Program-made: the position numbers and the translations under genes
The notes under the pieces: model-generated
Database searches by the model: none
What the model was told of the DNA's origin: nothing
The model's input: the letters and a program-made list of their open reading frames with translations, nothing else
Assembly: GCA_001949185.1 (NCBI GenBank)
Contig: BDGG01000010.1
Location: forward strand, 163,337 to 227,336
Direction: 5' to 3'
From: Ramazzottius varieornatus
Taxonomy: Eukaryota; Animalia; Tardigrada
DNA: 64,000 bases
Shown here: in pieces, positions 6,498 through 48,844 of the stretch
Position numbering within the stretch: position 1 is the first letter of the stretch
How the letters are laid out: each line of letters begins with the position of its first letter

Positions 6498-9400
6498 CTA
6501 CAGTGGAGTGCTGAATTTAGGTGATGCCAGGGCTTTCTTGACACAGTCGCGGAAACGCTTGGACAAAAGGGTGTACAGGAGCGGATTGGCACAGCAGTTT
6601 AGGAAGACCATGCACTTGCAGAACAGGACGTACCACAGGTCCAGCCAGGGTTCTTCCACCAAGCTGTTGTAAATCAACAGGCCCCGGAATGGCAGCCAGC
6701 ATATCGCGAATAGCAACACTGTTGCCACCAAAATCCGAAGGCTCTGCAAATGAAAACCTATATTTCGAACGAGCCGACTGTACGTTACTCATTGCTCACT
6801 TGCGCTACATTGCGCCGGTTGGGTGTACCCCGCTGCGCGGTAGTATCGCTTATCTGTTGGCTCGCTTGGCCGCTTCCTGACGACCGCTTGCGGGAGGATT
6901 GTGTTGAAAACATAGTGCCGTATTCGCGATCCACGACGGACACCGCTCGTGATAAAGGCTCCTCCGTTGTGATTCTCATCCTCCGTAAATATGTCCGGCT
7001 GCTGGATGACCGACGTCCAGTAGCATGTTCCATATCTGATCCTCGGTAGACCATCCTGACAGTGCCCCGTTCCTCTGGAAGGCTGCGTAGTACTCGACCA
7101 ATGTTCCAGTAGACAAACATAGCTTCAACGAGAGGAACAACATAGAAGAGGGCAAGGTCGGTGGTGAAGAGAGCGATGTATTGACTCTGAGAAAGAGAGA
7201 GCTGGCAGTGCCTTATTTCAGCCTGAAAGTACTCGTCTTGAACAACTTCTGCCAACCAGAACCACGGTGCGCAGTATAGAAACGCGACAGCCCAGCAGCC
7301 AGCAGTGATCTTTCGACTTCGATTAAGTGTCAGCTTTTGCGCCAGGAATGGCCGGCAGGTCGCAATGTATCGTTCCAGCGTAAAGGCCATCATGCTGCGG
7401 AACAAAGAAGCTGCGTTAAGATACCATCACTGCTCATAATTAACACCCACCCTGCCTGAGGAGGTACCGTACCGGGATACCGTTTGCACAAAATTTAAGC
7501 TGACATTGGGTCAACTAATCAGAAAATCGACATCCGGGATATGAGCATACGACATTTGGGTTTCGGCGGCCGAATTCTATAACGATCGATCAGTGTGCAA
7601 AGTGTTCGGGAAACGAGCTTAAAGTTTTGAGACCTCGAGGGCAAAGTTGAACTATACTGTACTGATGCAGGCAGGTGTAGCAGACATCGGGGAAGACGAT
7701 ACAGAAGCCTGTTTGACTGTCTGACCAGTAGTCAAGTGACTACGTCAAGAAAATCTGAAAGGGTTCGGAAATGTTGCAGTGGAAATGTTTCAACGTCACA
7801 ATGACGTCAGACCGTGTAAACATGCGCCTGCATCTGTTTGGACGCAAAACCCCGCGTGCGGGTATCTCAGCTGGTAATCACCCCAGAACTTTCGGGACCA
7901 TTTCCCCAAATAGGAGAACAGTGTTTTATTTTAGACTTCGAGCCACGGCGAGGTACGACAAACTGACGAAACAATGACGCCGGATATTCGCAACAACTTG
8001 ATGTTCAAGGTAAACGACATAATTCGAGCAACCCGAAAAGTTCGAACATCATCCACAACGCTTGGTTCATCTCTCATCGTACGTCAGGCTTTTTAACACT
8101 GGACTGGCCCATCTTTCTCAGAGAAAATGATTCCTGTGATCTACAGCGCGTGGTTGTTCTAATACCCACTAAGACCTCGAACAGAGGGATCGATCTACCT
8201 CAGGAAGCAACGAGCGGTTGATTACAGGCAACAGGAGCTGAGAAAATATATGCCCGAATTATGTCGTTTACCTCGTAAGGAAATGGTTATTCGGAAGCAG
8301 AAAAAGTCAGTACGCAATTCGGCTGTCGAAACCCGTTAAGACCGGTTAAACATATGGCTCGTACAGTAACGTCTTCCAATGATACTGCGCACAGCGCCAT
8401 CTCCGAAGTTATAACAACAGATGCGGTGGCATGCACCTTTCGATCTTTACGTCAGTGATCACTGATCACTCGTACTTGACAAGAAAAGTGCTTAGAAAAG
8501 TGCTCCGTGACGCGATATACCTGTGGGAGGCTTTACTGCAAATATAGGAGTGGGTTGAAATCTTAAAGCTTAGGTATCCGGTATGCATGGTCAACAAATG
8601 TTATCAAATGCAGCAGGACGTAGATATTGCACGGGTTACTCTGCCTTGTTCTTCAGCCAAAGATAGTCAACAACTTAGTACCTCAATGTACCAACGTTGA
8701 TGCAGAAGAAATTGGTGAAAACGAAAGCCGAGCACGCGAAGGACGTAGAATACCAAATTCCACTGGAGATAGTGTATCTGCAAAGGGTGTGATCTGTGAG
8801 GTAATAAATCAGTAGTTCCTTACTCATTGCTCAGCGAACTTACTACTAAAGCCTTCTGACCACACAGGTTTACGAAGGCAAGCCCTAATTCCTGACTGTT
8901 TGATTGGCCTGATATGGCAGCTTCCCCAAGTTGGTCGATAAGTCGAGCGGAAACGCAGAAGGGTGGCGGGGAACATTACGGAGGGGTTTGACCCATACAA
9001 AATTGGTTCTTCGTGCAGCTATGGCGCTGGAAAATTCAAATGTGACAAACAGCTGGGGAACGGCAATGCTAGGTCTGACGTCACGACTCAAACCGGTGTG
9101 CTAGCCGTGAAGTACCCGTGTACGTACGCTGCACCCATGGAGCCGCTACGTAGACAAAGCCGGATTCGCTCAGATAAACTGACCCGACTGCAAGCCGATG
9201 GCCACATGACGGGCAGCACATACGGACACCAAGCTGTTTGTCACACTGGCTATTGCGAAGCGCCATGGCTGTCTTCGTGAGAAAATGAGGAGAAAGCGTC
9301 CGATTTGCGGCGTCGACATATTTTTAAACATTGTCCTTCGAGTCATGTTTAGGGCATGGATAACGCCCAGTTTCATCAAACATTGACCTGGAACCACGTG

Positions 9401-12400
9401 ATCACCAGCTGCAGGGAAGCAAGACAGCAAGACAAGGTGATATCCGAGCCGGAGCCACAGGCATTATTTGTTACTTACACGAGGCCTTCCGGAACTGCAG
9501 TGCATATCGCGAGCAGATCGGCGCAGGCAAGGGATGCCTACAAAATTGCAAACATTAGCACAAGAAATAAACCGTGAAATTAATGATCTGCCATCCGCAA
9601 TGCCCCTGAATCTGCCACCTTTCTGCGGGAATGATACAAAAACTTGACGGACTCAGCTGCGACACTGTAGAAGCGTCAACCAGAACGGGGGTGCGTCCCC
9701 TGCTCGAATGAACACCTGAGCCGCTACAGGCATGACTGACGCCCTATATCGAATGGATCAAACTACTGTTTATGGGACGGTCATGCTGTCGAAACACAAA
9801 AATACTTTGCTTTGACTGTTCGGATGCGTTGTCACCACGATACTACACATCCTCCATTAATCACAGCAGCAATTAGAAATCTATACAACGGTGTAAACTA
9901 GTTTATACAAGGTCTGAGGGCTGCCTGTGTTTGAACTGATTTTGGTTTAACAAACAAAGGCATTGGCCAACAAAGGCAAGCCACAGAGCATTGCACATTG
10001 TGCAAACTTCGATGTGTATCTAACGCTCACGTTCAGTCAACGCATGAATTCTGGCCGTCCAAAAATATCAAAGAAGATGTGAGAATAACAATTTCAGGGT
10101 CATTCGCATGTCGTTGGTAAACATGAATGGGCAACCTACCAACGAACAAGATATGCAGGACGCATTGCACTTGCTCGAAAATAAATGTGTTTTCTGTAGC
10201 CTGTCCCTGACTCAGTTCTCGATCAAGGTCTTGCTGCGCATAGATGCCCGTTCAAGCGGAAGAATACCACACTGTTTAACGGAGGAAACAGCCTTGAAGT
10301 GCCGTCATTGGGATAATGTTTGTTCCTTATCGCCGGCCTTTTTTGCTTATAGACTCGCGCATTTGAGTGCTATTTTCCATCACGGTTCCGATTGCGTTCA
10401 CCGGATATGCGGCTCTGCGTATTATTTCTTGTTGTTTGGACCTGTTACGGTGCAACGAGACTCTACGACATCGCCGATTATGTGACCAACGACTGCAACA
10501 CCGTGGATCCCCACGTGCTCAAGTTCCTGCTGCATCGGGACGAAGACCATACCACTGCGATGAAGTAATTCATACGGGAGGGGCGCGAAGCAGGTGAGAA
10601 ACCATCAAAATATTTTCGTAAACCATCGGAATGGCCCATACTCCAAGACCATGAATGGCTGGAATGATCAAACAAAAACAGTTCAGCTTACTGCCGTTAC
10701 TGCGGGTTGGGTTTCACGGGTTGGGTACCCATGACCAAAAAAGTCGGTGAGTTTGTCAAATTTCCAATCACAAATTTCTACCAGGCGCAGTAAGACATGC
10801 CAACCGACATGATCATGTCTAAGCGGAAGCAGATGCTCTTGCATTCAAAGAGACCAACATGTTACTGCTTAATTTCAAGAAAAGCTACAAGGTCTCTGTT
10901 CTGATTTCGTCATCAAAAATCGTCGGACTTCTGGCTAGACAGCGAATTGCTTTTCACGGTACCAAATGTGAGCTGAAAAGTGAGGAAATGAAAGTCAGTA
11001 CGGGTCACGAGCTGTTCGATGTCGGCGGATGTTGGTTCAGCAACTTTGGAGTGATGTATTTGTTCCGGATGAACGCTGGCGACGTGGACCTTCTTAACAA
11101 TATCAGCAAGATTGCTGTCGGTCGGGATAGTCTTGTACTCTTAGCCTTGGCCGTATAATTCTCGCTAACCTATTAACCAAAACTTTTTCCCTTCTTTTGT
11201 TGTTGTGAGTTCCGACTGTGCGAACAATACCGGTGCATCTTGATAACCATTGAACGAAAATGTTTGACGTGATGGTACAGACTTAAGCTTCTTCTAGCAT
11301 ACGTCGACTGGTCAGCATGCGGAACCAGCTTTCCGATTCTAAAGATCACTTTCTGACGAAGCACCAGTACAGTTTTGTGGCTTCATTGTGATTCATCAAT
11401 CAAATCAAAATATTTTTCTGTTTCGACATCATAACCGTCCCGTAAGCAAAAGTTTGATCCATTCGATATAGGGTGCGTCGGCCCTGGGTACAGGGATGTA
11501 GCCGTGCCTTGAATCAGGGAAGGCTCGTTGAAGTGCGGCGAATTATTCTCACCATGTTTCACCGCATTAGTGAAAATTTCACCGACGCGGGAAGAGCGGT
11601 GGAGGACTGTGGAAGATGGTGAAGGAAGCAGATTCCGTCTTTTAGCTAACTGATTTATCGCACTTGATTGATTGGTTGCACCTTAGTCAATCAATCAAGG
11701 TACAAGTAATCAGTCAATCGAAGGACCGAATTTGCTCTCTTCACCATCCTTCAGTATTTTTCATCGTTCTTCCTCGCGTCACTGAAATTTTCAGTAAGTC
11801 GGTGGAGGATGATGAAAAAAATCACCGTAGTTCACCGAGCCTTCCTCCGGCGCAATTGAACCTTGATGATACCTATGTATCGGTGCCTATCCAGCACTGA
11901 TCCAAAAAGTTCGATCAATCGACGGCTACATCAGCCCTGCTTTCATTTAACACTGTGCTGCGAGCAGGAAATGCCGAGTTCGTCTAGGTTTCTATTAATT
12001 CGAAAACGCTGGGGCATTGCCTGAGGGTGCGCATGTCTCGTCCCATTTTCTGTAGCGTGGTGCGTGACGAATCTCCAGCTCACAGTGTGGCGCGATAAGC
12101 ACTTACATAATTAACGTACTCACACGCTCAGCTGTTGCGCATTTGTAAGGGGTTGACGCGCTTCAATCAGTGATCGAGCTGTTGTTCGATGTTTTCGATA
12201 TTAACTTGCTATACAGCTGGGAACTAGCATTAAACAGGCACTGACGATATCATCATTAACTTACGAGGTAACCATAGGCCGATGTGTGCAAGGAATCGGA
12301 AACGTAGATGGTAAAGATAACGATGGAATTCCCCGTGATTCCCAGCAGAAAGACGATGGTATAAGCTAGTATGGCCACAGTTCGATACCGTACTCCAAAC

Positions 12401-12474
12401 GGTTCGAAATAATAGCTGCCATTGCTGAAAGCCAATGTATCATTGTACTGCTCGAGAAGGTCGTCGGGGTGCAT
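6498..12474 (-). CDS. Class A GPCR, thyrotropin-releasing hormone receptor-like, paralog 1 (5 exons, ~401 aa, intact)
   Basis: Exons 12474-12265, 9537-9479, 8777-8682, 7394-6800, 6743-6498 join in frame with GT-AG introns. Motifs: TM1 LGITGN, TM2 SLACADLL, ECL1 W..C, TM3 FCINVGTLSMMAFTLERYIATCRP, TM4 W, TM5 LFYVVPL, TM6 FAICWLPFRGL, TM7 DLWY..F.K...FLNCCANPLLY. The AFTxERYIAxCxP-AQ and LWY..F.K..N...NP.LY patterns resemble TRHR. Confidence 0.9.
10470..11010 (+). pseudogene. Degenerate hAT (Tip100/ZMYM1-like) transposase fragment in GPCR1 intron 1
   Basis: The translation shows HEWLE*S...AYCRYC (TTF-type zinc finger), GFTGW and LLARQRIAFHG (DUF4371-like motif), broken by stops and frameshifts. 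Confidence 0.6.
11491..11939. mobile_element. Nested MITE-like inverted-repeat elements in GPCR1 intron 1
   Basis: Outer IR cagggatgtagccgt (11491) / acggctacatcagccctg (to 11939). Inner long imperfect IR ggaaggctcgttgaa (~11518) / ttcaccgagccttcc (~11845). Central ttgattgatt...gtcaatcaatcaa palindrome. Confidence 0.7.
11954..12101. repeat. Dispersed repeat, copy 1 (second copy at 29801-29939)
   Basis: Shared blocks ctgcg(a/g)gcaggaaatgcc, gcatgtc...cccattttctgtagcg, gtgacgaa and ggcgcga(t/c)aagca occur in the same order. Confidence 0.7.
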
Positions 12475-14553: not shown

Positions 14554-14976
14554 TCAAGCTGCCCGAGAGAAGGGACCATCGTCTTTGAGGAGCGGGAGCG
14601 GAGAACGAGACGTTGAACACCGTTGCCTGAAAAATTTTTTTCCATGAGCCGCGGGCTGGCGCAGGATTGGTGTCATGAAGTATTTCTTGTGTCGTCGGGG
14701 ACCGTCCTGGTGGAACGAGCTATGCTGCTGCCTGTCCACCGCTTCAGATGGCTCAAGGCCGACGCCGGGGTTGCCCGCGAACAGCCTTTGCCAACGAAGA
14801 TTAGGGTAGCCAGCTTTATCCGGCTGTGCTACTAACACAACGCCGCCATGCGCTCGATCGACCACGGTGCCCGGAGCAAGACGTTGGACAGTCATGAGGT
14901 CAGAAGGGAAGTGGGCTCCGTCGACTAGTAGGCTTCCTGCCAGGGTCCACACCACCAACCCACAATACAAAGCCAT
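14554..14976 (-). CDS. Secreted peptide-precursor-like protein 1 (~140 aa, single coding exon, unrecognised family)
   Basis: ATG at 14976 with signal-like N-terminus MALYCGLVVWTLAGSLLVDG. Basic site RRHKK, then YFMTPILRQPAAH-G-KK (amidation signal). Homologous to the ORF at 48407-48844. TATAAAAA on the minus strand at ~15084-15091. Confidence 0.7.
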   Translation of the reverse strand: MALYCGLVVWTLAGSLLVDGAHFPSDLMTVQRLAPGTVVDRAHGGVVLVAQPDKAGYPNLRWQRLFAGNPGVGLEPSEAVDRQQHSSFHQDGPRRHKKYFMTPILRQPAAHGKKFFRQRCSTSRSPLPLLKDDGPFSRAA

Positions 14977-17230
14977 CGCTGGTCGCGGATTTGGAAGTGT
15001 CAACAAAGGTAGCGAGACCGCTGAACAAAGGTGTGAGTCTGGGGAAAAAAAACAAATGGATATTCCGGGAAGGGTAAATCCTGTTTTTATACTAAGCATG
15101 GTCCATGTTCCAGAGGGTGCAGAGGGATAGTGGGTTTACGTTTCTTGGAGCCTCACAGATCCGGAGCTATTCCGGCATAAGAATATGACCATGCTTCAGG
15201 GTTCACAATCAGGGTTGGTCAGCTTTTAATTACGTATCTTGCATCGCTCCCCCTGTGATAAGCGGTCTGTTTAAATCGAAATTTGAGACCACTGCTCTCA
15301 TGATCGCTCACCGAGTGCCGTAAGAAGGTGCCACGTCACCTGATAACTGGAGATTTGTTGCCGCTAGTTCCGGTTTGAATGACGAGTTTGGTTCCTTTGA
15401 TAGTGATAACGTCTCAAGTTGAGAACCCCTGTAGCACAACGTGGACTGTCTGGGCTGTTCGAACGCGGAACAGAATTTTACTCTCAGAAGAAGTACACAT
15501 TTTCCACCCAGTTCCCCCGGATCTAAAAAAACCTTTTATTAAACATCAGATAGGCTGAACATTCGATGGAAAGAAGCACAGAAAACGCTTTTTTCAGCCT
15601 GTCAAGAAGAGCTTTTTCTGTGTCCGAAAATAGGCAGTTGGAACACGGATTAATATTTATTCAGTGTCAGAAAAGCTATAACATAGCTATCCCTTCGAAA
15701 AAAAATCTGCATAATTTTGGCGCTAATTCTGCTGTGCTTCCTAGCTAAAGGAAAGGTAAAGAACCTGATTTCTGGAGGGAAATTTAATTTCATCGAAACT
15801 TTTCCAAAATCACGAAACCAGAGTGATACACGTGCCGAAGCTGTTTGCCATGCCAGGCTTTGTAGCATTGGATGGCATGGCACAATCACGCGGAGAGTTG
15901 GGTTTGGCATGCTATGGGGTTCTTTTACCAGTGGAGAAAGCAGCAAGTATGTTCTGGCTAGTGTTCAGCATGGCTCTTAGTGAACTGACGCAGCTTTGAC
16001 TTTTCTTCCCACTCTGTCAAGCAACTTTCTGCCGGATCCGTTGTTCCGTTTAAAATGTTAGATTTTGAGGGCTATCTTTTTACTCAAAGGAAAAAACATG
16101 TGCGGCCATTGCAAGCCGGTAGAATAATTAATACAGTAGTAAAGTTAATTGCGTGTTACAAACTGTACTCGAATAACACTTAAGATCACGATCCTACACA
16201 CACTGTCTGATATGGCATACTTCCACCAAACCAATCAGACATCTATTCGGACAGGTTATAATTCCCAGCTTCTCCTAAACATAAAATTCTGGTTGGCACA
16301 GACCTGTTAAGGAGCTATTAACAGGGGTGTGCTGTATGACGCAATGTTCGCGCGTTTTCACGAACAACTTTTTCTTCCTGTGTGTCTGTTTGCGGAACCA
16401 ACCTCGATCTTCTTCCCTTCCTGTCAGCTTATGGTAAGACTGCTAACTGGATTTGTCGTGATTGCATACAGTAAGTACACCAGCTTTTTATTTGCAGATT
16501 ATCCTGAACGTCTTCGCTCTGGACAAGTACATCACCACCGTCTGCAGCTGCTGTCTGAAAGTCCATCACCGCGACTCGTCCCTGCCTTTTCCGTCTTCTT
16601 TCAATTAATCACAGATCTACAAGTGCCTTCGCAGTGACACAGGTGTGTAGCTAATCCATTTTACGTGTTCGTAGTACATGAACGTATATAGAAATCAGTG
16701 TTATTCTACTAATGGAAATAGATAATTGAAAGTAGCCGAAAACTGGGACTTTCAAATTTTACTATGATAATTGAGATTATGAAATCGAGACGACGAATTT
16801 TACTATATAGTAAAATTACAGTAAAATTAGACCCACAAGTCAATAGTAAAATAGGTAATTAAAATTCGTACTTGCAGCAATTGAAATAATTAAAATTTGG
16901 AGGAGCTGGGCTTCGAATTTTAATTATGACAGGATGCCCAGCAAATCCACAGTGAATTGTACCACGAAAATCCCTTAGTAAATATTATCCCGGACGAGAG
17001 CTGGTTAATCAGTACAAGAGATGGATACGGAGCGCTGATTCTAAATTTCAGCTTCAGTTAAATTGACGTACTCGATTACTCAATCTCATACCGTGAATTT
17101 GGTGAATTGATTATTCGACTTGATTTAAATATAGTGATATCTGTTAGACTCGCAGTTAGCTCTTCTTTTCCTACCGTTCGTACTTCAATTGGTATTCTCG
17201 GTTCTTGGCCATATAATTTTAGCATCAGCC

Positions 17231-22245: not shown

Positions 22246-22246
22246 C

Positions 22247-26760: not shown

Positions 26761-29749
26761 CAGGGTTGTTCCGATACGATGTATTCTAATGCATAATGCA
26801 GAATTCAATTCCGATATGGCCCGCTTAGAGTANGGCATTGGATCGCGCGGCGGNNNNNNNNNNNNNNNNNNNNNNNNNNNNNNNNNNNNNNNNNNNNNNN
26901 NNNCGCTTCCGCCCTGGAATCTGCTGAAATTGTTACCGCTTGGACTCGCTTAGTATATGATGTGACTGTTTTCCGCCCGCCCCGCATCGATGATAATTAC
27001 GATAAATGTTTAAAAGTAAACCTTGTTGCGTCACATTGCGAACAATCTATATGATAGGCAACCACAGGAAACTGTTTTCGTATGTACAGTTGGGTTTGTT
27101 CGTACTGTAACATCCATGAGTTGAATGTTATAAACGCAATTTCGGTAATGTATTCCTTAAATTCGCGAATTCATGTTTTCCTTCCCGATTTCTGTTTGGT
27201 CTTTATTATTGCACATGATCTTGACTGCCACAGATTGATTGTACTTTCGGGTCAGACGATGAGATGGAAGACATTGCCGAAGAGGAGGAGATCGATCTCA
27301 CAAGCGCCGGAATTCCGCAGAAGAGAAAGAAACACAATGTGACAGGAAAACCCAAAGCCGTAAAGCGTACAATCCGCAGCACTGAGCTGACCAGAGAGGA
27401 GGTGGTGAAAGGCATCGGAGATGGTGTTTACGACAGAAAAGCGAATGACGGTGGAAGAAGTGAGATCTGGCGAGCATTTTCCAAAGTTGAGACAAGCGAC
27501 ACTAAAGAAGAACTCGACTTCGTGTCCTGCAATAAATGTCATCATGTCTACTCTCATAAAGTAAACTCTGGAACGACGGCGTTGGCAAACCATGTGGTGA
27601 GTTGCAAAGGGAAAAGCGGCGGTCCAATGGATGGCTATGTCAGAACCGTCGATGGGATATCCAGGAAAACCAGAAGATCGTTTCGGATGCTCTCGCTCAG
27701 TAAGTCTGAATTCAGAGTTAAATAATCATCGTAATCAGGCGTAATACGTGTTATGTACAGGTATTGTGCGATGGACTCAAGATTGTTTCGGGAATGTGAA
27801 GGAAAAGGATTCCAGAAAGTAATCGATGCTGTTATCTACGTAGCAAAGAGACACAAAGGTGTTCTGGAAGCGAAGGATATCATGCCCACGGCCAAGACTG
27901 TTAGCAGTCACGTCACAAGTCAAGTCCGCGCACTGCGGGAAAAGGACGGGCCCAGAGTAAAAGATATCCTTCTGAACCGAGGTGGCTGCATCACATTGGA
28001 TGGGTGGACCGAAGATTACGCCAAGACCAAGCACATGGGGTTCAAACTGCATTACATTGAAGATTATGTTCTCAAAAAGCAGCTTCTATCAATATCCGAA
28101 CACGACTGTTCTAAAAGTCAGGAAGGTGAGAAATAATGTCAAACGAGATATTTCTTATAACCAAATACGCAATATATTTATACTACTTTATTATTTCAGC
28201 TGAAGAAATACGAGAGTTTGTAGTCAAGAAGCTTTCTGAATTCAGTTTATCGGAGGAGGATTGCAAGAAAGTGACATTCGTCAGTGATGCGGCGCCGAAC
28301 ATGATGAAAACATTCAACCTCAACAATCGAGCACTTATGAAGCGCATTAGCTGTGCTTGCCACATGCTGAACACTTGTCTTGCGAATGCAGTGAACCGTC
28401 GACCCAATTCCCAATCCAAACTCAGTGACGATGGACTACCAGTGCTGAAGTTGTTTCAGCAATGCAAAGAGCTGGTGACCTACTGTAAGCAAGCTTACCT
28501 GTTTCGAGAGTTGTCAGCAGCTCCCAAGCAATCTGTCGATACTCGATGGAATTCCAGCTTGGACATGCGAGACTCAATCATTCGACTTTATGAAGAATCA
28601 GGAGACCTTCTTCAAGCACGGGACGAAAAAGATAAGCTACCGGGACCGCTAGGTTTTCTGCAGGCTGTTGCAGATCTTTCGCCGCCTTTCAAGAAGCCCT
28701 AAGCGCAGCCACGAGTCCAACCTTACAGTTGGTCGTAGAACACTTTCTCGAAATACGAATTCATGTGAAGGACGCCCATGCGCCGGAGTATCATGATCTG
28801 CCTCAGTACAGAGCACTTCAAGCTTATCAGGTACATTAAGTTTTGTGAACTCAGATAGATAGTTGCTCAATTATTGATTCAAGTTTTCAATCCACAGGTT
28901 CAACTTCAAAAATGTGCTGAAGCCAAGCTTACTGTCGACGAGTACCACAAAGTAGCAGTCTTTTTGGATCCAGCCATGAAAGACCTGTTGATGTTCGAAG
29001 GTCAAGACAAAGAAGCTGTTCTAAACAGTGTTCGTCGGTTAAGCGGTGACACCACTTTGAGTAGTTCCCGGAATCCAAACAAAGATGAGTCCACTGCTAC
29101 CGCGTCTGAATTCAGCAAATTTCGTCGATATGCCAGCGTGAAGGAGACCAACAACTACACCGATGAGATCGCGCTTTAATTGAGCCTACCGCCGCGGCCC
29201 AGTACAAAGACAATGCTTCAGTTTTGGAAGGAACATGCAAGTGATCTACCGAAGCTTTACGCGCTAGCCCTCAATATCTTTGCCATACAGGCATCAAGTG
29301 CGTCGTCCGAAAGATTGTTCAGTGATGCGGGTAATATTTTTACTGATAAACGTACTATGCTTGGAAGTGAAAAGCTTGATGACTTGTTGTACTTGAAATG
29401 GAATTTGGAGTTTGTTGTATCAGAGCCAATAGTCTCTACCGTCAAGGCTAAGACTTGATAACTATGTTTCTTCCATAGTAGTTGCTTCTGAATTCAGACT
29501 CGTTTACCTTGCCTGAAGTACCGCTCACTTCCGCTTTCGCGTCGGCATTAAAGGTTTACTGCCCGCTTTCGCCTTGAGATTACCAAAAATTATTCCGTAC
29601 AGTCCAGCGTGGACAAGAAAATTTTGTGAAATTCTGGTTTCCGCCAAGGAAAAGTTGAACGGTTCCCTACTCTCGGCCCGCTGTAGCCATAGACTTGACA
29701 TGGGTGACCGGATTTGAACTAGTTCCGCTGTCGTTTCGGAACAACACTG
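26761..29749 (+). mobile_element. Full-length degenerate hAT DNA transposon 2 (Hermes/hobo-like, ~3.0 kb as assembled, contains an N gap)
   Basis: TIRs cagggttgttccgatacga / tcgtttcggaacaacactg. 8-bp TSD gctatagt (26753-26760) / cctatagt (29750-29757). Confidence 0.9.
27264..29458 (+). pseudogene. hAT transposase, intron-containing, with frameshifts/stops
   Basis: BED finger RSEIWRAF...CNKC...GTTALANHVVSC; DSRLFRECEGKGF; CITLDGWTEDY; FVSDAAPNM; CACHMLN; DTRWNS; QFWK...PKLYALALNIFAIQASSASSERLFS. Confidence 0.92.
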
Positions 29750-32681: not shown

Positions 32682-34458
32682 TCAGTCATGAGTACAGTGT
32701 GGTCTGTGCATTTCGGGGCAAGGCGAATTCAGAGTTCGCGCGTGCAGCAGGGTTAACCTTCTGAAAGTCAAAGCTTTCTTAACGCATTCGCGAAAACGTT
32801 TGGACAAGAGGGCGTACAGGAACGGATTAACACAGCAGTTGAGAAAGATCATGCATTTGGAGAACAGGGCATACCACAAGTCCAGCCACGGCTCTTCAAC
32901 CAAACTGTTGTAAATCAGCAGACCACGGAAGGGTAACCAGCAAACCGCGAATAGCAACACTGTCGCTACCAATATGCGAAGACTCTGCAGACGAAGCCAA
33001 TATTAACAAGTTTGCAAGACATGCAGTTTGAAGGTGGGTCCTTACCTGAGCAACATTACGCCGCGTATTAGGTCTGCCGCGTGGTGTGACACTATGGATT
33101 ATCTGCGGGCTCGGTTGTCCGTTCCTCTCAGACAGTGTGCGTGTCGCACTTGTCACAAGCGTGGCGCCGTGATCGCGGTCCGCGAAAGACTCATTGCGTG
33201 ATAAGTGGTGTTCCGGTGTGCTTCTGGGCTTTCGTACAAATTTCCGGTTGCTGGATGGGTAGGGTTTCATCGAGTTTTCCATCTCCAGTCCCTGATGAAT
33301 CATACTGACAGGGCCCAGCTCGTCTGGAAGGCTTCGTAGTACTCTTCCAATGTTCCAGTAGACAAACATGGCTTGGATCAGAGGTACCACGTAGAGCAGT
33401 ACCAAGTCGGTGGTAAAAAGGCCGGTGTATAAACTCTGTGTCAGAGTCAACTGACAATGATACGATCCAGCAAAAATCTCGTCTTCCAGGACTTGTGCCA
33501 GTCCCAACCAGGGACTACAGTAGAGAAAACCGAGCACCCAACAACCAGCAATGATCTTGCGACTGCGTTCTACTGTGCACAGTTTCTGAGCCAGGAACGG
33601 ACGGCACGTTGCGATGTATCTTTCAAGAGTGAATGCCATCATGCTGTAAGATATCAACGATTATTTATGCAGAAAGTTGCATGGCTTCGTACCAGTGCCA
33701 GATCTTTCAAGCGTCTGACTTATCGGCTTGTTATCATAGTAGACAATGTACCTACCCGGGCTTCGACGGGATACAGTTATTTGTCTGGGGGCTTACCTCA
33801 AAGTGCCGACATTGATGCAGAAAAAATTCATGAAAACAAAAGCCGCACAGACAAATGATGTCGAGTACCAAAGCCCGCTGGATATAGTGTAGCTGTTAGA
33901 AGGAAGAAAAACGTGTTACAAAGAGCATACCGCATGAAAATCGATGACATCGGAAGTAACGACCATAAAAGCCTGATCAATGCAAATTCAGTGAGAGCAC
34001 AGAGGCGTGACTTACACGAGACCTTCCGGAACGACAGTGCATATCACCAACAGATCCGCGCACGCTAGAGATGTCTACAAAATCAGAAAACGTGTCCGTC
34101 GACAACATTAATTCTAGCCACTTGGGCCAGTAAACATTACTAAACATAGCCTGATTAGCGGGATGAGATGTGCACATGGAATGCGTTACGGTAGCAGAAT
34201 CTTTGATAGTGAACCATAATGGTGACACCATTAACTTACGAGATAAGCGTAGGCGGAAGTGTGCAGGGAATTGGAAACATAGATGGTGAAGATAACGATG
34301 GAGTTCCCGGTGATTCCCAGCAGAAAGATAATGGAGTAAGCCACAGTAGCCACGATTCGGTAGCGTACTCCGAAAGGTTCAAAGTAGTAGATTGGTTCTT
34401 CAGTTTCATTGTTGGCGCTTGTCTCGTTGGAGACTTCGAAACTATCGTTCCAGGACAT
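32682..34458 (-). CDS. Class A GPCR, TRH-receptor-like, paralog 2 (5 exons, ~424 aa, intact)
   Basis: Exons 34458-34240, 34074-34016, 33892-33797, 33643-33046, 32984-32682 join in frame. Intron positions and the 59-nt and 96-nt internal exons are identical to paralog 1, with the same 7TM motifs. N-terminal N-glycosylation sequons (NDS, NET). Confidence 0.92.
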
Positions 34459-40053: not shown

Positions 40054-41292
40054 ACTGACTACTGCTCAACAGCTGCGTTTTGGTGGTAAGATCACAGATC
40101 ATGCAAAATATATGTAACTTCGATCCAAACCGGGCAAAATGGGAATTGTGCGGAAAGGAAAACTGCGGTGTTGTGCTCACAGTGAGCACGGTGGTAATCA
40201 GGGTGTTGAACCTGCGCGGCAAAGGGGGTGGATTGTGTACGCAAAAATTAACCGTCGAAAATGGGTGTTGGATGGAGCCAGATGACAATGGCCAATGACA
40301 TTTGCCTGTGGGTCAGAGTAACGTTGGTATTGGCCGTTGGATAAATAAGCTCCAGTTTATTTGTCGCGCCCATTATCGACGGTTAATTTTTGCGTATAGT
40401 GGTACATGTGCCTACATCAGCAACCCGCCGCTAGACCAACCCTGAAGAATCAAGTTATCTGCGGAGCTCCCCCACACCTGGTCAGCGAAATAATCGTCTT
40501 TCACACAACTTATATGACTGGCAAAATCTCATTGAACGACACTTCCAGATAGTTGAAGGTGAGCCTGTCGATCATTAAGGGCTTACAAAGACTAAGCTGG
40601 CTTGGTGGTTGTGATTACACCAGCTATTTTGGTGGATACGCCCAGAAAATTATTTTGACCAGTCAGGAAAGCGGTGTAACAGCTCGCTTTGAAAGCCCCG
40701 CACTGCAGGTAAGTACGATTGGAGGATTATGAGATCTTTGATGTCGGAGGAACCACCATACACTCACTAGTAGGACGAGTAGCAAGAAACTTCATCATGG
40801 AAGTGACATTTGGAAGTTTGGAGGGGTGCACAACGCACTAGTGATGTTGTCTAAGTCTGGTGTAATTACGAGTTATTCCGGAGCGACTCGTAATTACACA
40901 GAACGTTTAACGTCTGGTGGAATGAATAGGCGAATCGTAAGGGTGTGCCAATTATATCAGCGTTGTGATTCCACCAGCGGTATAATCTGTCTTTGTGAGC
41001 CCTTATTCTGTGTCAATGTCATATAGCGTAATTACCTGAAGGCTTCCATACTAGATCGAATACGCTCCCAATGACAAAAAATACAGTATGTGTTGCCTGG
41101 GGATCTCCGCGGGAAGCGCAGACGACCTCAGTAGAGTTAGGTGGGTGCTTATGAATACATACAGGCAATCTTCTTGATCCATCTCATACAAAAGGTTCAA
41201 GAAAATGTTTCACTAATTCCTGATGAAAGTGTTCAATCGCAGGTGTGATCGAGTACGACCAATTAGAGGGTACAGAAGCTTTTTTCAGAGTA

Positions 41293-41561: not shown

Positions 41562-42829
41562 TCAGGTGATGAGGTATAACTTGTCGGCCACCAACATAAA
41601 ATTCTGTTACAACTTTCCCCAGTTTGAATCTAATCCTTTTCAATCGAAGTATTCACCATTACTATCGACACACTTTTGCCATTTTTCCGGTAGACAAGAT
41701 AGGCCTTTACGGAAGAACTCGAGAGAAAGAGAACCGGCGAAGTTCTCGAAGACACTTTTCACAGCTTCTTCGGAATTAAATTTTCTTCCTCTCAAAAAGT
41801 TATCAAAATTCAAAAAGAAGTGATAATCTGTTGGAGCTAAGTCAGGACTGTATGGTGGATGAGGAAGAGTTTCCAGACCGAGCTCGCGTAATTTGGCAGA
41901 AGTCTTTTTCGCGGAGTGAGCTTTTGCGTTGTCGTGTAGCAGCAGGGGCTTGTCACGATTGACCAACTTTGGTTGCTTGACGGTCAGCTTCTTCATCATT
42001 TCTTCCAGTTCCAGAGAGTAGTAGTCTGCTACTATTGTTTTGCCAGGAGGAAGAAAGTCATAGTGCACTATCCCTTCCATTGTCCACTAAACAGTAACCA
42101 TGATCTTGCGTTGGTGAGGCTCAGGCTTTGGAATAGTTTTCGGGACTTCACCTGGGCTCAAAATTACCTTCTTCCGCTTCCGGTTGTTGTAAAGAATCCA
42201 CTTCTCATCACACGTAACAATTCGATGAAGGAAAGGTTCGTTTCTGGAACGGTTGAGGAGAGAAAGACACACGTCCACCCGGTGCCTTTTCTGGAGTGCG
42301 CTAAGTTCATGAGGTACCCACTTTTCCAACTTTTTCACCTTACCGATCTGACGAAGGTTCAAATCGATAGTCACGGGTGATACGTTGAAGTGTTGAGACA
42401 ATACGGCAGACGTTTGGGAAGGATCGGACTCCACCAGCTTTCTCAGCTCGTCGTTGTTCACTTTCAGTTTTGGCCTTCCGTGAGGGTGATCTTCGAGACT
42501 AAAATCTCCCGAACGGAGACGAGCATACCATCGTTCCACCGTACGTTCGTTAGTGGCGTCTTCACCAAACACATTGTTGGTATTCCGAACTGTCTGTGCT
42601 GCGTTGGTGCCGCGACGAAATTCATACTCGAAAATAGTCCGTAACTTGCTCTTGTCCATGGGCGCGCCAATAACTCCACAGAGAGGGCAGAAGCAACAAA
42701 CTAACATAAACGAAGCAGCGAAAGATAGTAGACGAACACTAGCATCGACACAAAAAAAACGAGACGAAACGAGATGGATTTTTCAATGTGAGACTGGTGT
42801 GAGCCGACAAGTCATACCTTATCACCTGA
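41562..42829 (-). mobile_element. Full-length mariner transposon (1268 bp)
   Basis: 27-bp TIRs tcaggtgatgaggtataacttgtcggc / gccgacaagtcataccttatcacctga (2 mismatches), TA TSD on both sides. Confidence 0.95.
41640..42659 (-). pseudogene. Mariner DD34D transposase (Hsmar1/cecropia-like), single premature stop
   Basis: MDKSKLRTIFEYEF.. HTH region, WVPHEL, TCDEKW, LHDNA, YSPDLAPTDY. The only visible lesion is TAG at 42087-42089 in place of the W of VTVWW; both halves are in the same frame (339 codons). Confidence 0.95.
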
Positions 42830-43879: not shown

Positions 43880-44348
43880 GAGAGCTATCTCTTCCGGATC
43901 GCTTCGGCCACATCCTACCTACTCTTCGTAGCTTGGACCTGTGCGTGTGTGTGGCAGCGCTTGCTGGGCCTTTTTGAGGCGATCTACAGCTCGAGACGCC
44001 CGGATTTCGAAGCAGGGACCGTCAGCATCCTTCAGACCGTTATCTCCCAAGCATTGCAACCCTCCAACAACGACAATCTGAGGACTGCTCAACGAGAAGG
44101 CGGCGATAGCAGCTTTGATACACTGGTGGAATCGTTCTTGAAATACGCGTCGCAAAACGGAATTCCTGAAGGATTCAACTGGAGTGAAGTCAGGGCCGTG
44201 GTTGTCACTGTCCCCAACGTCGATAACTACACCTTTGGCGGGTATCACCAGCGTATCTCGGGATACCTCGACCGATTCGGAGAGTGGGTCTCCTGAACTT
44301 CAAAGCGAGTCGTGATGCTCGTCTTCGTGCCCTTGATTGAGCGCTCAG
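43880..44348 (+). other. Coding-like orphan exon of unknown origin (one in-frame stop)
   Basis: Long open frame ...GFNWSEVRAVVVTVPNVDNYTF...WVS*TSKRVVMLVFVPLIERS, ending at a strong cag|gtaagt donor. No recognisable family. Confidence 0.3.
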
Positions 44349-44740
44349 GTAAGTCAATTATTGATTTGGTTGCTGATCGTGTTATGCTGTGTCGCGTGAC
44401 TATCAGCGGTTATTTGACCCATGGTTGATCACGTGGTTTCGGTCGTTGTTGTGAAACGCTTCATCCATTTGGAATATCCTTTGAGCCTTCTGAAGATGAC
44501 TCCGGGAAAAACGCACGCGTTTCCCCCGATCGCACGTAGGTTGCTTCCTGCGCACGTCGCCTGACATCCTCTTCTGGGCAGTATTGGTCTCTTTGAAGTT
44601 TTTCAGGTGTTTCCACAATCAACCACCTACACAAGCTCGGATAGTCGAAAACGCAACGCAATTATTCTTAACGTTCGGCTCAACTTCCCTACTAGAAACG
44701 ATAAAGTTGCTGCCTCTGGCCTCTTGAGGACGACTCCGGG

Positions 44741-47460
44741 GTGAACGTAGGCGTTCCCTCGGATCGCACCACGATGGCATCTCAAGGAAAGTCGAAAGTG
44801 AAGTGTGACTTGTGTGGTTTCTTAGCTACCTCAGAGGGTTTCCTGACCAAGCATCGAGGAAAAAGGCCATGCCAGGAAGCCCAGAGAAAGCTACGTGACC
44901 AAGCAGTCATCCTTAGCCAGTCCTCAGCAGCTGACGACGACAACCGATCCGTCAATCCTGTCAAATGATCTGTCCCGACTATCAAAAGAATACCACGTGC
45001 TGCGAGAATAACTGCAGCTTCGGCCCTCCTCGATATTGCAAGAGAGTGTGTCAGGAAGAATGATGTGGAACACTGGCAGAAACTACTTACTTTCCCCTCG
45101 GTTGCTTTCAAACTTCCAGAGCCGTCCTCTAAGAAGAAGTCTTTTACCACTCTCGTAAAAAAACATCACTAGGCCAGCTGCAGCGGTGGATATTACTGCG
45201 AAACCGCAAATTAATAATACAAAGCAGAGGAAGAAATCGATCGACAAAGACTTGCAGATGAAGAGAAGAGTGGAGCTGAAGTTGAACGGTGGCGATATCA
45301 GCGGTGCCGTTAGAGTCCTCGCCTCCGAAGATGTGATAGCCCCTATGTCAACAGGGACTCTGGAAGAGCTTCGGAAAAAGCATCCTCCCGAACATCAAGA
45401 TGCCTATTTCCCCTCGAAAGAGTGCTTTGGTCCTCCCTCGCCACCAGTCACCACGGATGAATTAATTTCAGCTGTAAGCAGTTTCCCCTGTGATTCAGCT
45501 GGGGGTCTTGATGGTCTTCGCCCTCAGCACCTGAAAGACCTGCTAGGGGGTCTGAGGGATCCTATGTCGCTACAGCTGGCGCAAGCACTTGCCGACTTGG
45601 TCGGCTTGATGCTGGATGGCAAAGTACCAGAAGATGTCTGCCCTGCCTTGTATGGTGCCTCGCTGATCGCTCTGCTGAAGAAGACAAGGGGAGTAAGGCT
45701 GATTGCGGTCGGCAACACTCTTCGGCGTCTAGCGGGAAAGATCGTCAGTAAACGAGTGATGGAAGCTACAGGCAAGCTTGTACGACCCCAACAGCTCGGC
45801 CATGGCACTAGAGGCGGCGCCGGAGCAGCAGTACATTCCACTAGAGCTTTCCTCTCAGGCCAGACAGGCTGCCAAACTTTGCTGAAACTCGACTTCAGGA
45901 ATGCATTCAATTCCGTTCAATGAGACAGGCTAATCGAGGAGGCCCAGAAGTTCCTTCCCGAGGTTTACCCTTTTATTGTTCAGATGTACAGATCGCCAAC
46001 AAATCTCATCTACGGCGAGCACGTCATCCCTTCCGCCCGGGAGGTTCAACAGGGAGACCCCCTAAGACCATTGCTGTTCTGTCTTCTGACCCGAAACCTG
46101 TCCAAGTCGCTTCAGTCGCCCTTCAATGTATGGTATCTTGACGATGCAACGCTTGGTGGAGACTTCGAACTGGTAAGCAGGGACTTCCAGACCATTGTGG
46201 AGATCGGCGCTTCTCTGGGTCTTGAGCTCAATCCGTCCAAATGTGAGTTTGTTTTCTGTGGAGGTACACTTACCCAACAGCAAGTTACACGCCAGAAAAT
46301 GAAGCTCCTCTGCCCTGGCGTAATTTTTCCGGACAGAAACACCCTAACGCTACTTGGAGCTCCAGTCATTTCGGAAGCGATCCCTTCGGTCCTAGAGAAA
46401 AAGATTCGACAAGCCGAGCTCATGACTACACGCTTGGAAAAAATCTCGGCCCACCAAGCTTTGTTTCTGTTGAAGAACTGTCTTAGTCTACCTAAGCTAT
46501 TGTATATCCTTCGTTGCAGCCCGACTTTCAGTTGCCTTCCTTCCCTTCAAGCTTTTGATGAGACCATCCGAAAATGTGCAGGTAAAATCGCCAAAATCGC
46601 GATGGACGACACGGCCTGGCGGCAGTCAAGCCTTCCCGTCAGTAGGGGCGGTCTCGGCATCAGACGCGTCGATGAACCGGCTCTCCCGGCCTTTTTGGCT
46701 TCCGTTCACTCGTCGTTCGATCTGATGGAACAGTTCTATCCTCAAGTCGACGTGAATAGTATAGTATCGCCAGCGATACACCTCTGGCAGGAACAAAGTA
46801 TCTCACAGCCTCCCATTCTCCCTCTCCGATCAGCGCAGAAGGCGTGGGACATCCCGATAGTTGACCAGCACTATCAAACCCTTCTGGATGCTAGTTCCCA
46901 AGCAGAAAGAGCCAGACTTGTTGCCGTATCAGCCAAGGACTCAGGAGCATGGCTTAATGCGCTACCCATTTCTGTTTCAGGTACTTTGCTGGACGACAAC
47001 TCGTTTCGCATCTCAGTTGGTTTGCGTCTTGGGGCTTGGCACTGTGAGCCCCATGTTTGTCGTTGCGAAAAACTTTTTGGGGCGCCACGGCTTGTCTTGT
47101 CAGTTGAGTGCCGGACGTCATTCTAGACATTCTGCTCTGAATGACTCCCTCCACCGTGCCCTCATTAGCTGTAAAGTCCCGAACGTTCTTAAGCCCAACG
47201 GGATCCTCCGAGACGACCAGAAACGACCTGACGGACTGACGCTCATCCCGTGGCAACAAGGTAAGGCTCTTGTCTGGGATGTAACCTGTGTTGACACTCT
47301 TGCAGAAACATACCAGCGAGGATCAGCGGGGCAGCTCGGTTATGCCGCCAACAAGGCGGAAGAGCTCAAGAGACACAAGTACCGCGAGCTGGATGGTCGC
47401 TACCTGTTCTGTCCAGTAGCGTTCGAAACTTTCGGCCCTTTGCAACTTTCGGCCCCTTGC
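44741..47460 (+). mobile_element. Non-LTR retrotransposon with restriction-like endonuclease, CRE-clade-like, frameshifted and 3'-truncated
   Basis: N-terminal zinc finger CDLC...H; KRIPRAAR; RT motifs SAGGLDGLRPQHL, LIAVGNTLRRL, KLDFRNAFNS, QQGDPL, WYLDD, GLELNPSKC, LPVSRGGLGIR. C-terminal CRC...HGLSC, RH, KRPDGLTLIPW, WDVT..D, K..KY (PD-D/ExK RLE). Disruptions near 44968, 45170, 45920 and 47070. Confidence 0.9.
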
Positions 47461-48406
47461 AATTGCTTTTGCAAATTGGCTTGCGTTTTGTGCATGGCTG
47501 TAGTTGATTATGAATAAATTTCCTTTTTAAAATACTCATCACATCAGGCACGACATACTCACTAAAACCACACGTTTAACTGCGACACGAGGCACAGAAA
47601 ACTGCAAGCGCAGTCTACGGACAGCTTCATATGTCTTGCGGCTATATCATAAAAGCTGCGGGGTGGGTCACAGACAGCCGTCACAGACGGCCGTAACTGT
47701 TAACGGTCCTAGGGTTGAACTATGCTGAACCGTTCGCGAGCTGGAGAACGCAAAAGTTTGTTCTTCATCATTTCATAGAGTGGAAGGATCGAGTGTTTTT
47801 CCCAGAAATGCCTCTGCTTCGCGCATCATTTGTCGTTCCGATCGTTTGTACGATCAGCCAAGTTATGTTTTGTTATGTTTTGACGTGTTTTTTCCCTTTC
47901 TCCAGAAGTACGTTTTGAATGCTGTTTGTAGCAACATGTAAAAGGTCTGCTTTCTTTGTTCGTAACTTGAGTTTTGACTTAGAGGTTGCTTACACCTTTG
48001 GTTCAAAAGTCACCAGATTTGGAAATGAGGTCCACACTTATCCTCCCATAAGATCTTGCTTAGACTGTACGTAACTGCCGAACGATTCTATGGAGTTTTA
48101 GCGTGTATTTTACTGTCGTGCTCATATACGGTAATTTGAAAATATTTATTGAAAAAATAATTAAAATAATTAATAGATTTTGGAATTACGTTCCCAGGCA
48201 AAGTCAGGCCCTTAGACCACCCCTGCCCAGAACCCTTCTGGTACTGATGATGACAGCTGAAGCTCCTCCCTAATGTGTCTACGACGAAACTCGCGTTTAG
48301 ATCCGTCTTCGTGCAGATTTCCATCACAAAGTAAAACCATAGCTCATTAGCTGAAATACAGAGATTGCAACATGGTTAAATGAAAGTATGGCGGAAACCA
48401 ATCAGT

Positions 48407-48844
48407 TTATGGAGAAATATTCATTGACTTTGACCATGGAGAACTGGCAAGCAGCCGTCGCCGGCCGTTGCTTGCAGGTCGTCGTCTTGCCTGGGACAGT
48501 GGTGGGCGCAAAACAGCAGACACAAAGTATCGCTTGGCTCGCGCAGGGCCATCCGGCAAGACATGCAGGTTATTCGACTGGTCTTCGTCCTCAGCAGCTG
48601 CATAATCATAGCCCGGATATCCTGCGAGAAAGCTCCGTTCCCCGTGGAAACTCAAGTGTTCGTCTTCGCCATTTGCCGTCGCAGAGGTTTCATCGATCCG
48701 GATATCTGGAGCGGCGATTACGTTGTCTGCCAACAGGTCCTGAGCGGGACCGTAGCCTGGGAGAGAGCGAGCTGCTGCTTGGGCGATACTCATCAGCAAC
48801 CCTCCGGCGATGAGCCAGACCACCCTGCTACTCGCAGAAGCCAT
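48407..48844 (-). CDS. Secreted peptide-precursor-like protein 2 (~145 aa, single coding exon), paralog of 14554-14976
   Basis: Signal-like MASASSRVVWLIAGGLLMSIAQA, acidic spacer, AGYP, then DGPARAKR|YFVSAVLRPPLSQA-RRR-PASN-G-RRR (furin-type RxKR site, later Gly + basic site). Confidence 0.72.
   Translation of the reverse strand: MASASSRVVWLIAGGLLMSIAQAAARSLPGYGPAQDLLADNVIAAPDIRIDETSATANGEDEHLSFHGERSFLAGYPGYDYAAAEDEDQSNNLHVLPDGPARAKRYFVSAVLRPPLSQARRRPASNGRRRLLASSPWSKSMNISP

What the first reader, a model, noticed from the sequence alone, without database searches (positions are those of the whole stretch)
6498..48844. Duplicated [peptide precursor + TRHR-like GPCR] arrangement: candidate linked ligand-receptor system
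Seen: two intact GPCR paralogs (6498-12474 and 32682-34458), each with a homologous secreted precursor-like gene 5' of it on the same strand (14554-14976 and 48407-48844). The order is GPCR1-pep1-GPCR2-pep2. The spacer is 2 kb in unit 1 and 14 kb in unit 2, where I found no host gene, only MITEs, a mariner, a CRE retroelement and unassigned sequence. Established: TRHR-family receptors bind short processed peptides, and ligand and receptor genes are usually unlinked in animals. Inference: the pair duplicated as a block and may be a co-evolving ligand-receptor module with an undescribed peptide. Linkage alone does not prove cognate pairing.
Basis: partly seen in the sequence, partly recalled or inferred. 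Interest (0 to 1): 0.85.

Follow-up and report, generated by a model that had tools for sequence, protein, structure and literature searches.

The report
Duplicated receptor plus small secreted-peptide gene pair
In the tardigrade Ramazzottius varieornatus, a two-gene block (a hormone-receptor-like gene and a small species-restricted gene for a secreted, cleavable peptide) was copied in tandem long ago, but nothing yet shows that the peptide is the receptor's ligand.

Summary
The window is Ramazzottius varieornatus scaffold C10.

- **Receptors.** Two intact five-exon class-A GPCR genes lie on the minus strand. G1 is RvY_14136 (401 aa). G2 is RvY_14150 (424 aa here, annotated only as a 199-aa fragment).
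- **Upstream ORFs.** Each receptor has a homologous small ORF upstream on the same strand: pep1 (140 aa) and pep2 (145 aa). Each has an N-terminal hydrophobic signal-like segment and a conserved RxK[KR] site, followed by YF....LR.P.
- **Copy number.** The two pep genes are the only copies in the genome. No homolog turned up among 1.84 billion protein representatives.
- **Receptor relationships.** G1 and G2 are sister paralogs (70% identity, dN/dS 0.16) inside a five-member Ramazzottius clade of TRHR-like receptors. The other three members have no pep-like neighbour.
- **Binding pocket.** Five of the six TRH-contacting residues of human TRHR are changed: three Tyr to Phe, plus Gln to Asn and Arg to Lys.
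- **Assembly gap.** It lies in intergenic repeats between the two units and touches none of the four genes.

An old tandem block duplication is the best reading. The cognate ligand-receptor idea is neither supported nor refuted.

The parts
6498..12474 (-). GPCR1 = RvY_14136, 401 aa. Coding exons 12474-12265, 9537-9479, 8777-8682, 7394-6800, 6743-6498 (with stop). Introns 2727, 701, 1287 and 56 bp.
   Evidence: Exon and junction map; junction residues match the annotated isoforms P0003 and P0004, and the length equals public P0010 (GAV03754.1). Pfam 7tm_1 on exons 4 and 5. Best solved relative is human TRHR, E 3.7e-44.
32682..34458 (-). GPCR2 = RvY_14150, 424 aa by the exon map. Coding exons 34458-34240, 34074-34016, 33892-33797, 33643-33046, 32984-32682 (with stop). 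Introns 165, 123, 153 and 61 bp. The public model holds only 199 aa.
   Evidence: The public fragment is P0002. Pfam 7tm_1.
14554..14976 (-). pep1, a 140-aa ORF from the conserved ATG. It has a signal-like hydrophobic N-terminus, an RRHKK site, a 13-residue YF...H peptide, then Gly-Lys-Lys. The in-frame extension to 15099 gives the 181-aa public model.
   Evidence: The 181-aa form is held by NCBI and UniRef (P0001).
14644..14682 (-). Predicted pep1 peptide YFMTPILRQPAAH. It is followed by GKK (14635-14643), an amidation plus dibasic signal.
   Evidence: Read from the sequence. Aligned with pep2.
48407..48844 (-). pep2, a 145-aa ORF. It has a signal-like N-terminus ending in AQAAA, then a RAKR site, a 14-residue YF...A peptide, RRR, PASN-G-RRR and a tail. 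It is absent from the protein libraries searched.
   Evidence: Not returned by the profile search.
48488..48529 (-). Predicted pep2 peptide YFVSAVLRPPLSQA, with no Gly and so no amidation signal.
   Evidence: Read from the sequence.
15084..15091 (-). TATAAAAA, 108 nt upstream of the conserved pep1 ATG and downstream of the non-conserved in-frame ATG at 15099. It is a possible core promoter that would make the conserved ATG the first in the mRNA.
   Evidence: Read. Inference only.
26854..26903 (.). Assembly gap between unit 1 and unit 2. It is intergenic and sits at the edge of a young multi-copy zf-BED element.
40570..41010 (.). MITE-like repeat in the unit-2 spacer, at least 40 copies at 84-89% identity.
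41640..42707 (-). mariner/Tc1-type transposase copy split into two ORFs, in the unit-2 spacer.
   Evidence: Pfam HTH_48, Transposase_1 and DDE_3.
45186..47517 (+). Reverse-transcriptase-bearing retroelement in several frames, in the unit-2 spacer. Its clade was not tested.
   Evidence: Pfam RVT_1 on two ORFs.

Best explanation
This is an old tandem duplication of a two-gene block. Gene A is a divergent member of the tardigrade TRHR-like class-A GPCR expansion. It keeps all signalling motifs, but its pocket has lost most of the polar TRH contacts. Gene B lies upstream on the same strand. It is a small gene confined, as far as can be seen, to Ramazzottius. It encodes a secreted pre-pro-protein that a furin/PC-type convertase would cut at RxK[KR]. 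The cut releases a C-terminal peptide starting with YF and holding LR.P. In pep1 this peptide is trimmed and amidated to a 13-mer; in pep2 it is a non-amidated 14-mer.

After duplication, both receptors stayed under purifying selection. The pep genes kept only the signal segment, the cleavage site and the peptide core. Unit 2 took up transposons in its spacer, and G1 took them up in its introns.

Shown: the four genes, their homology, intactness, copy number and arrangement. Inferred: secretion, processing, a single duplication event, and any function. I take the pairing to be most likely two neighbours copied together, not a demonstrated ligand-receptor pair.
For: - Exons and splice phases are identical in G1 and G2. 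Identity is 69.6%, dS 1.26, dN 0.20 and dN/dS 0.16.
- G1 and G2 are sisters, with support 96/92 in the exon-4 tree.
- The pep ORF is the only similarity between the two spacers, at protein level and not at DNA level.
- Both pep frames are open over 140-145 codons, although a random frame of that length is open with p about 5e-4.
- Both pep ORFs are GC islands, 0.57-0.58 against 0.42-0.47 in the flanks. Each has a single N-terminal hydrophobic peak.
- In the conserved core, 6 of 10 identical residues use different codons.
- There are only two pep copies in the genome.
- pep1 is a public gene model.
- TRHR is the best solved relative by more than 20 orders of magnitude over the next hit.
Against: - There is no RNA or peptide evidence for either pep gene.
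- pep2 is not annotated.
- No homolog in any other tardigrade proteome was found.
- Synonymous divergence looks higher in the pep pair than in the GPCR pair. That could mean two events, or gene conversion between the receptors.
- The order of the two units rests on a scaffold join across a gap.
Confidence: 0.55

Rival explanations
1. Cognate module. The YF...LR.P peptides are the ligands of the adjacent receptors, and ligand and receptor were born or kept together and duplicated as a co-evolving unit.
For: - The linkage is kept in both copies.
- The receptor clade has replaced five of the six TRH-contact residues, so a non-TRH ligand is plausible. The changes are Q3.32N, Y3.33F, Y5.39F, Y6.51F and R7.39K, with Y7.43F as well (contacts from PMC9437008).
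- F6.51 with F7.43 is specific to this clade among 16 paralogs.
- The peptide layout is that of a processed hormone.
Against: - Linkage is the only link.
- Three further members of the same receptor clade have no pep-like gene within 20 kb upstream, and none exists elsewhere in the genome.
- The C-terminal ends, which usually matter in amidated peptides, are not conserved between pep1 and pep2.
- No conservation outside this species was found.
Confidence: 0.13
2. Two events of different age. The pep genes duplicated earlier than the receptors, or the receptors were later homogenised by gene conversion, so the present symmetry is not one clean block copy.
For: - Codons differ at identical residues in 29/41 pep positions against 125/263 GPCR positions (Fisher p 0.007).
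- Four-fold sites differ at 17/24 against 66/133 (p 0.075).
- pS is 0.78 against 0.61.
Against: - The pep sample is small, parts of the pep alignment are unreliable, and both pairs are near saturation. The JC distance intervals overlap at about 0.9-1.1.
- No long near-identical tract suggests recent conversion; per-exon pS is 0.43-0.81.
- The same order and strand in both units is most simply one event.
Confidence: 0.15
3. The pep ORFs are not working protein genes. They would be decaying relics, non-coding upstream exons or leaders of the receptor transcripts, or annotation noise.
For: - pep2 is unannotated.
- There are no homologs elsewhere.
- There is no expression evidence.
- dN between the copies is high, at 0.67.
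Against: - Both frames are open and homologous in the same frame, while the flanking DNA has lost all similarity.
- The start codon, hydrophobic segment and cleavage site are conserved.
- Both ORFs are GC islands.
- The antisense frames are not conserved.
Confidence: 0.12
4. Assembly artefact: the two units are uncollapsed copies or a wrong scaffold join.
For: A 50-N gap flanked by repeats lies between the units.
Against: The copies differ by 16-29% in exon DNA and completely in introns and spacers, far beyond allelic divergence. Each unit is gap-free.
Confidence: 0.03

Closest known systems
Thyrotropin-releasing hormone receptor (TRHR), human; structures 7WKD and 7X1T
   Same: It is the best solved relative of G1, E 3.7e-44 against about 4e-18 for the motilin receptor. 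Shared features are the ERY motif, CWxP, NPxxY, D2.50 and the TM3-ECL2 cysteines. N6.58 is kept.
   Different: Five of the six residues that hydrogen-bond TRH (PMC9437008) are changed: Q105N, Y106F, Y192F, Y282F and R306K, with Y310F as well. G1 and G2 have a long ICL3. The family has at least 16 intact-looking exon-4 paralogs in this genome.
Ecdysis-triggering hormone (ETH) and ETH receptor of panarthropods
   Same: The ETH receptor is a peptide GPCR of the same broad group. ETH and its receptor are reported in tardigrades (PMC6660194).
   Different: The published R. varieornatus ETH-receptor candidate is RvY_04976, not these genes. The pep peptides lack the C-terminal PRX-amide that, from my own knowledge, defines ETH.
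Classical neuropeptide precursors (signal peptide, dibasic sites, Gly amidation)
   Same: The layout of pep1 fits exactly: a hydrophobic N-terminus, an RxKK cleavage site, a short peptide, then Gly-Lys-Lys.
   Different: There is one peptide copy only. The conserved part is the N-terminal half of the peptide, not the amidated end. pep2 has no Gly. No family match turned up in Pfam, the protein libraries or the ESM Atlas.
Motilin/ghrelin-type ligands (own knowledge, a lead only)
   Same: Their receptors are the next-best solved relatives. Their peptides act through an aromatic/aliphatic N-terminus, which is the part conserved between pep1 and pep2.
   Different: In those precursors the peptide follows the signal peptide directly. 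Here about 75 residues intervene. No sequence homology was shown.

Membership tests
Class-A (rhodopsin-type) GPCR | Seven-transmembrane 7tm_1 domain with E/DRY, CWxP and NPxxY | tested here: met
   Pfam PF00001 on exons 4 and 5 of both genes. ERY, CWLP and NPLLY/NPFLY are read.
TRHR subfamily | Closest to TRHR among characterised receptors | tested here: met
   Human TRHR is the top solved hit, E 3.7e-44, against about 4e-18 for the next hit, the motilin receptor. UniRef names these proteins TRHR. No tree with reference invertebrate TRHR/EFLamide receptors could be built.
TRHR subfamily | TRH hydrogen-bond network Q3.32, Y3.33, Y5.39, Y6.51, N6.58, R7.39 (PMC9437008) | tested here: not met
   G1 has N, F, F, F, N, K at these positions, so only N6.58 is kept. 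G2 shows the same residues in its exon translations.
TRHR subfamily | Activation by a TRH/EFLamide-type peptide | not testable with these tools
   Needs a receptor assay.
ETH receptor | Orthology to arthropod ETHR | tested here: inconclusive
   The published tree uses RvY_04976 as the R. varieornatus member. RvY_14136, RvY_14150, RvY_04092 and RvY_06273 are absent from its files. I built no tree of my own with ETHR references.
Neuropeptide / peptide-hormone precursor | N-terminal signal peptide | tested here: inconclusive
   There is a single hydrophobic peak at residues 8-18, KD 2.1-2.4, and none elsewhere. pep2 has an AxA-type site. No signal-peptide predictor was on hand.
Neuropeptide / peptide-hormone precursor | Conserved mono/dibasic convertase sites flanking a conserved short peptide | tested here: met
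   RRHKK|YF... and RAKR|YF... align. They are followed by GKK in pep1 and RRR in pep2.
Neuropeptide / peptide-hormone precursor | C-terminal Gly amidation signal | tested here: inconclusive
   Present in pep1 (H-G-KK). Absent after the main pep2 peptide, though pep2 has a second PASN-G-RRR.
Neuropeptide / peptide-hormone precursor | Orthologs in related species | tested here: not met
   No hit beyond pep1 itself in the word-based search or in a profile search of 1.84 billion representatives. Unannotated small ORFs in other genomes could not be searched.
Neuropeptide / peptide-hormone precursor | Expression in neurons or endocrine cells, and detection of the mature peptide | not testable with these tools
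Linked ligand-receptor module | Linkage kept wherever the pair occurs | tested here: inconclusive
   Both pep copies sit 5' of a receptor. The three nearest receptor paralogs lack a pep-like ORF within 20 kb upstream.
Linked ligand-receptor module | Physical binding or activation | not testable with these tools
   Needs an assay. See Tried and rejected for the one in-silico attempt.

The most novel reading that the evidence does not exclude
A lineage-restricted peptide gene arose next to a divergent TRHR-like receptor whose pocket had lost its TRH contacts. It became that receptor's ligand, and the ligand-receptor pair then duplicated as one block. This would be a young, physically linked peptide-GPCR signalling module in an animal, with two diverging ligand-receptor pairs side by side.
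Probability: 0.12. Interest if true: 0.75.

Novelty: new member of a known kind. Interest (0 to 1): 0.4.

Why it matters
If the peptides do activate the neighbouring receptors, this would be a rare animal case of a physically linked peptide-GPCR pair, caught after a block duplication. It would give a tractable system for studying how new neuropeptide signalling pairs are born and diverge. It would also deorphanise part of a large tardigrade TRHR-like receptor expansion.

If they do not, the locus still yields three things:
- an orphan, Ramazzottius-restricted secreted-peptide family;
- a corrected full-length model for RvY_14150;
- a receptor clade with a rewritten TRH pocket.

Tried and rejected
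- **Complex prediction** with P0010 plus pep1 residues 99-128 returned no verdict: score 0.26 against a mark of 0.34, and the controls were not run. It is no evidence either way.
Afterwards pep2 letters went only into local scripts and into one paper search for the two short peptide strings quoted in the finding (no paper found).
- **ESM Atlas** gave no usable hit for pep1. **Pfam** gave nothing for either pep.
- **A genome-wide degenerate DNA pattern** for [KR]YF....LR.P gave 10 hits against 9 for the control. The five I inspected are chance matches with no precursor context.
- **Koziol 2018**, the catalogue of tardigrade neuropeptides, is not held, so I could not check whether this family is listed there.
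- **Uncollapsed haplotypes** were considered and rejected, because the divergence is far too high.
- **The antisense 141-aa ORF over pep2** was considered as the real gene and rejected, because it is not conserved in unit 1.
- **A third family member at C2:6989048** was considered and rejected: it is a 71-aa frame with no signal segment.
- **Joined spliced models** of G1 and G2 were not built or searched. Exons were searched by reference, statistics were pooled per exon, and trees were made per exon. The public protein P0010 served as the full-length G1.
Full report
**Where this is.** The window is scaffold C10:163337-227336 of a 55.84-Mb, 200-contig genome. The receptor proteins it encodes are public Ramazzottius varieornatus models RvY_14136 and RvY_14150, so the organism is this tardigrade.

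**Observation: the receptors.** Both lie on the minus strand.
- blastn between the two units aligns four blocks at 71-84% identity and nothing else.
- Reading the junctions gives five coding exons in each gene. All introns are GT-AG with the same phases.
- G1 is 12474-12265, 9537-9479, 8777-8682, 7394-6800 and 6743-6498, giving 401 aa. That equals the length of the public isoform RvY_14136-1 (P0010), and the junction residues match the annotated isoforms P0003 and P0004.
- G2 is 34458-34240, 34074-34016, 33892-33797, 33643-33046 and 32984-32682, giving 424 aa. Its public model is only a 199-aa fragment.
- G1 has long introns (2727, 701 and 1287 bp) where G2 has short ones (165, 123 and 153 bp). 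The last intron is 56 and 61 bp.

**Observation: the small ORFs.** pep1 (14554-14976) and pep2 (48407-48844) lie 5' of G1 and G2 on the same strand. The spacers are 2,079 and 13,948 bp.
- They align from the start codon: 27% identity, E 1e-8. The Smith-Waterman score is 94 against 28 +/- 5 in 2000 shuffles, and 82 without the signal segment.
- In a six-frame search of the whole genome, each finds only itself and the other.
- tblastx of the two spacers, and of the window against itself, finds this ORF as the only colinear similarity besides the receptor exons. There is no DNA-level match.
- The arrangement is therefore real and far beyond chance.

**The gap.** The gap at 26854-26903 lies between pep1 and G2.
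- Its left flank is an old repeat with at least 43 copies at 73-88% identity.
- Its right flank is a young element with a zf-BED ORF, at least 20 copies at 94-98% identity, whose copies begin exactly at the gap edge.
- No other copy joins the two flanks, so continuity is unproven and could not be tested with reads.
- No gene of the finding crosses the gap. Each receptor-pep unit is contiguous. Only the relative order and strand of the two units depends on the scaffold join.

**What the receptors are.**
- Pfam finds 7tm_1.
- Human TRHR is the best solved relative by a wide margin: E 3.7e-44 for P0010, against about 4e-18 for the motilin receptor in the search with isoform P0004. Exon 4 alone shows the same ranking.
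- ERY, CWLP, NP..Y, the TM2 aspartate and the TM3/ECL2 cysteines are present.
- The published TRH hydrogen-bond network is Q105, Y106, Y192, Y282, N289 and R306 (PMC9437008). It reads N, F, F, F, N, K in G1, and Y310 is also F. G2 carries the same residues.
- The genome holds 27 exon-4 matches to this family.
- Per-exon trees place G1 and G2 as sisters (96/92). They sit within a well-supported five-member Ramazzottius clade with C2:2.01 Mb (RvY_04092), C2:8.59 Mb (RvY_06273) and C6:1.56 Mb.
- F6.51 together with F7.43 is specific to that clade among the 16 paralogs read.
- The only H. exemplaris and Paramacrobiotus proteins recovered (36% and 35% identity) fall outside it.
- The published tardigrade ETH-receptor candidate is a different gene, RvY_04976.
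- These are therefore divergent TRHR-like peptide receptors whose ligand is unlikely to be TRH-like.

**What the pep genes are.**
- Each ORF has one hydrophobic peak at residues 8-18 and none later. Each is a GC island (0.57-0.58 against 0.42-0.47 in the flanks).
- The best-conserved stretch is DGP.R.K[KR] followed by YF....LR.P.
- RAKR in pep2 is a furin-type site, and RRHKK in pep1 is a dibasic site with arginine at P4 (established convertase rules, own knowledge).
- pep1 continues with AAH-G-KK, which predicts an amidated 13-mer. pep2 continues with LSQA-RRR and then PASN-G-RRR.
- Six of the ten identical residues in the core use different codons.
- A random frame of this length stays open with probability about 5e-4. 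The antisense frames are not conserved.
- I conclude the ORFs are, or recently were, under protein-level selection.
- pep1 is a public model of 181 aa starting at a non-conserved upstream ATG. A TATAAAAA sits between that ATG and the conserved one, which would favour the 140-aa form; this is inference.
- pep2 is absent from the protein libraries.
- Nothing similar was found in Pfam, by word-based search, by a profile search of 1.84 billion representatives, in the ESM Atlas or in the paper library.

**Duplication history.**
- G1 and G2 show 69.6% identity, pS 0.61, dS 1.26, dN 0.20 and dN/dS 0.16. Both are maintained.
- The pep pair shows 36% identity over 120 aligned codons, pS 0.78 (saturated) and dN 0.67.
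- At identical residues, codons differ in 125/263 GPCR positions against 29/41 pep positions (Fisher p 0.007). At four-fold sites the counts are 66/133 against 17/24 (p 0.075).
- The pep pair is thus at least as old as the receptor pair and may be older. The sample is small and parts of the alignment are weak. The distance intervals overlap at about 0.9-1.1, and per-exon pS shows no conversion tract.
- One block duplication remains the simplest account but is not proven.
- The larger spacer of unit 2 is partly insertions: a MITE, a split mariner and an RT element. It also holds about 6 kb of unique, GC-flat DNA with no family hit.

**Is it a ligand-receptor module?** The only positive evidence is the repeated linkage plus a receptor pocket that has moved away from TRH. 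Four points count against it or leave it open.
- The three other members of the same receptor clade have no pep-like ORF within 20 kb upstream. A profile search on six-frame translations found nothing there, with the window as positive control. A degenerate motif scan of the genome stayed at control level.
- The amidated end is not conserved between the copies.
- No relative's genome could be examined.
- No expression data could be obtained.

I therefore rate cognate pairing at roughly one in eight.

**Limits.** Joined spliced models were not built or searched.

**Verdict.** This is a real, tidy tandem duplication of a TRHR-like receptor together with an orphan secreted-peptide gene. It is worth a receptor assay, but the co-evolving module is at present a hypothesis resting on linkage alone.

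Noticed in passing
window 32682-34458: The public model RvY_14150 covers only 199 aa (exon 4). The sequence supports a complete 5-exon, 424-aa receptor with canonical splice sites.
   Followed up: yes
window 6498-12474: Two annotated isoforms of RvY_14136 would give non-functional receptors. Isoform -2 skips exon 3, which encodes the start of TM3 with the disulfide cysteine. Isoform -3 retains the 56-bp intron 4 and ends after ICL3.
   Followed up: partly
window 26904-27725: A young transposon with a zf-BED ORF has at least 20 copies at 94-98% identity across the genome. It looks recently active and probably caused the assembly gap.
   Followed up: partly
G000 C2, C5, C6, C7, C9, C12, C28 (loci L007-L022): There is a large expansion of TRHR-like receptors: 27 exon-4 matches, of which at least 16 look intact. 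Some are local clusters, for example C7:1.06-1.10 Mb and C2:0.64 Mb.
   Followed up: partly
window 48388-48813 (+): A 141-aa antisense ORF overlaps almost all of pep2. It has no counterpart opposite pep1, so it is probably a by-product of the GC-rich coding strand.
   Followed up: partly
window 51735-53044 (+): Saposin A and saposin B2 domain ORFs, a prosaposin-like gene, lie just upstream of pep2 on the other strand.
   Followed up: no
window 60449-61198 (-): An ORF with a chitin-binding peritrophin-A (CBM_14) domain.
   Followed up: no
window 4259-4308: A second 50-N assembly gap lies outside the finding, and there is a single N at 26833.
   Followed up: no
window 13880-14058 and 14229-14454: Two short multi-copy repeats (about 25 and about 8 copies) sit inside the 2-kb spacer between pep1 and G1. 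One of them recurs in a G1 intron at 9021-9188.
   Followed up: partly
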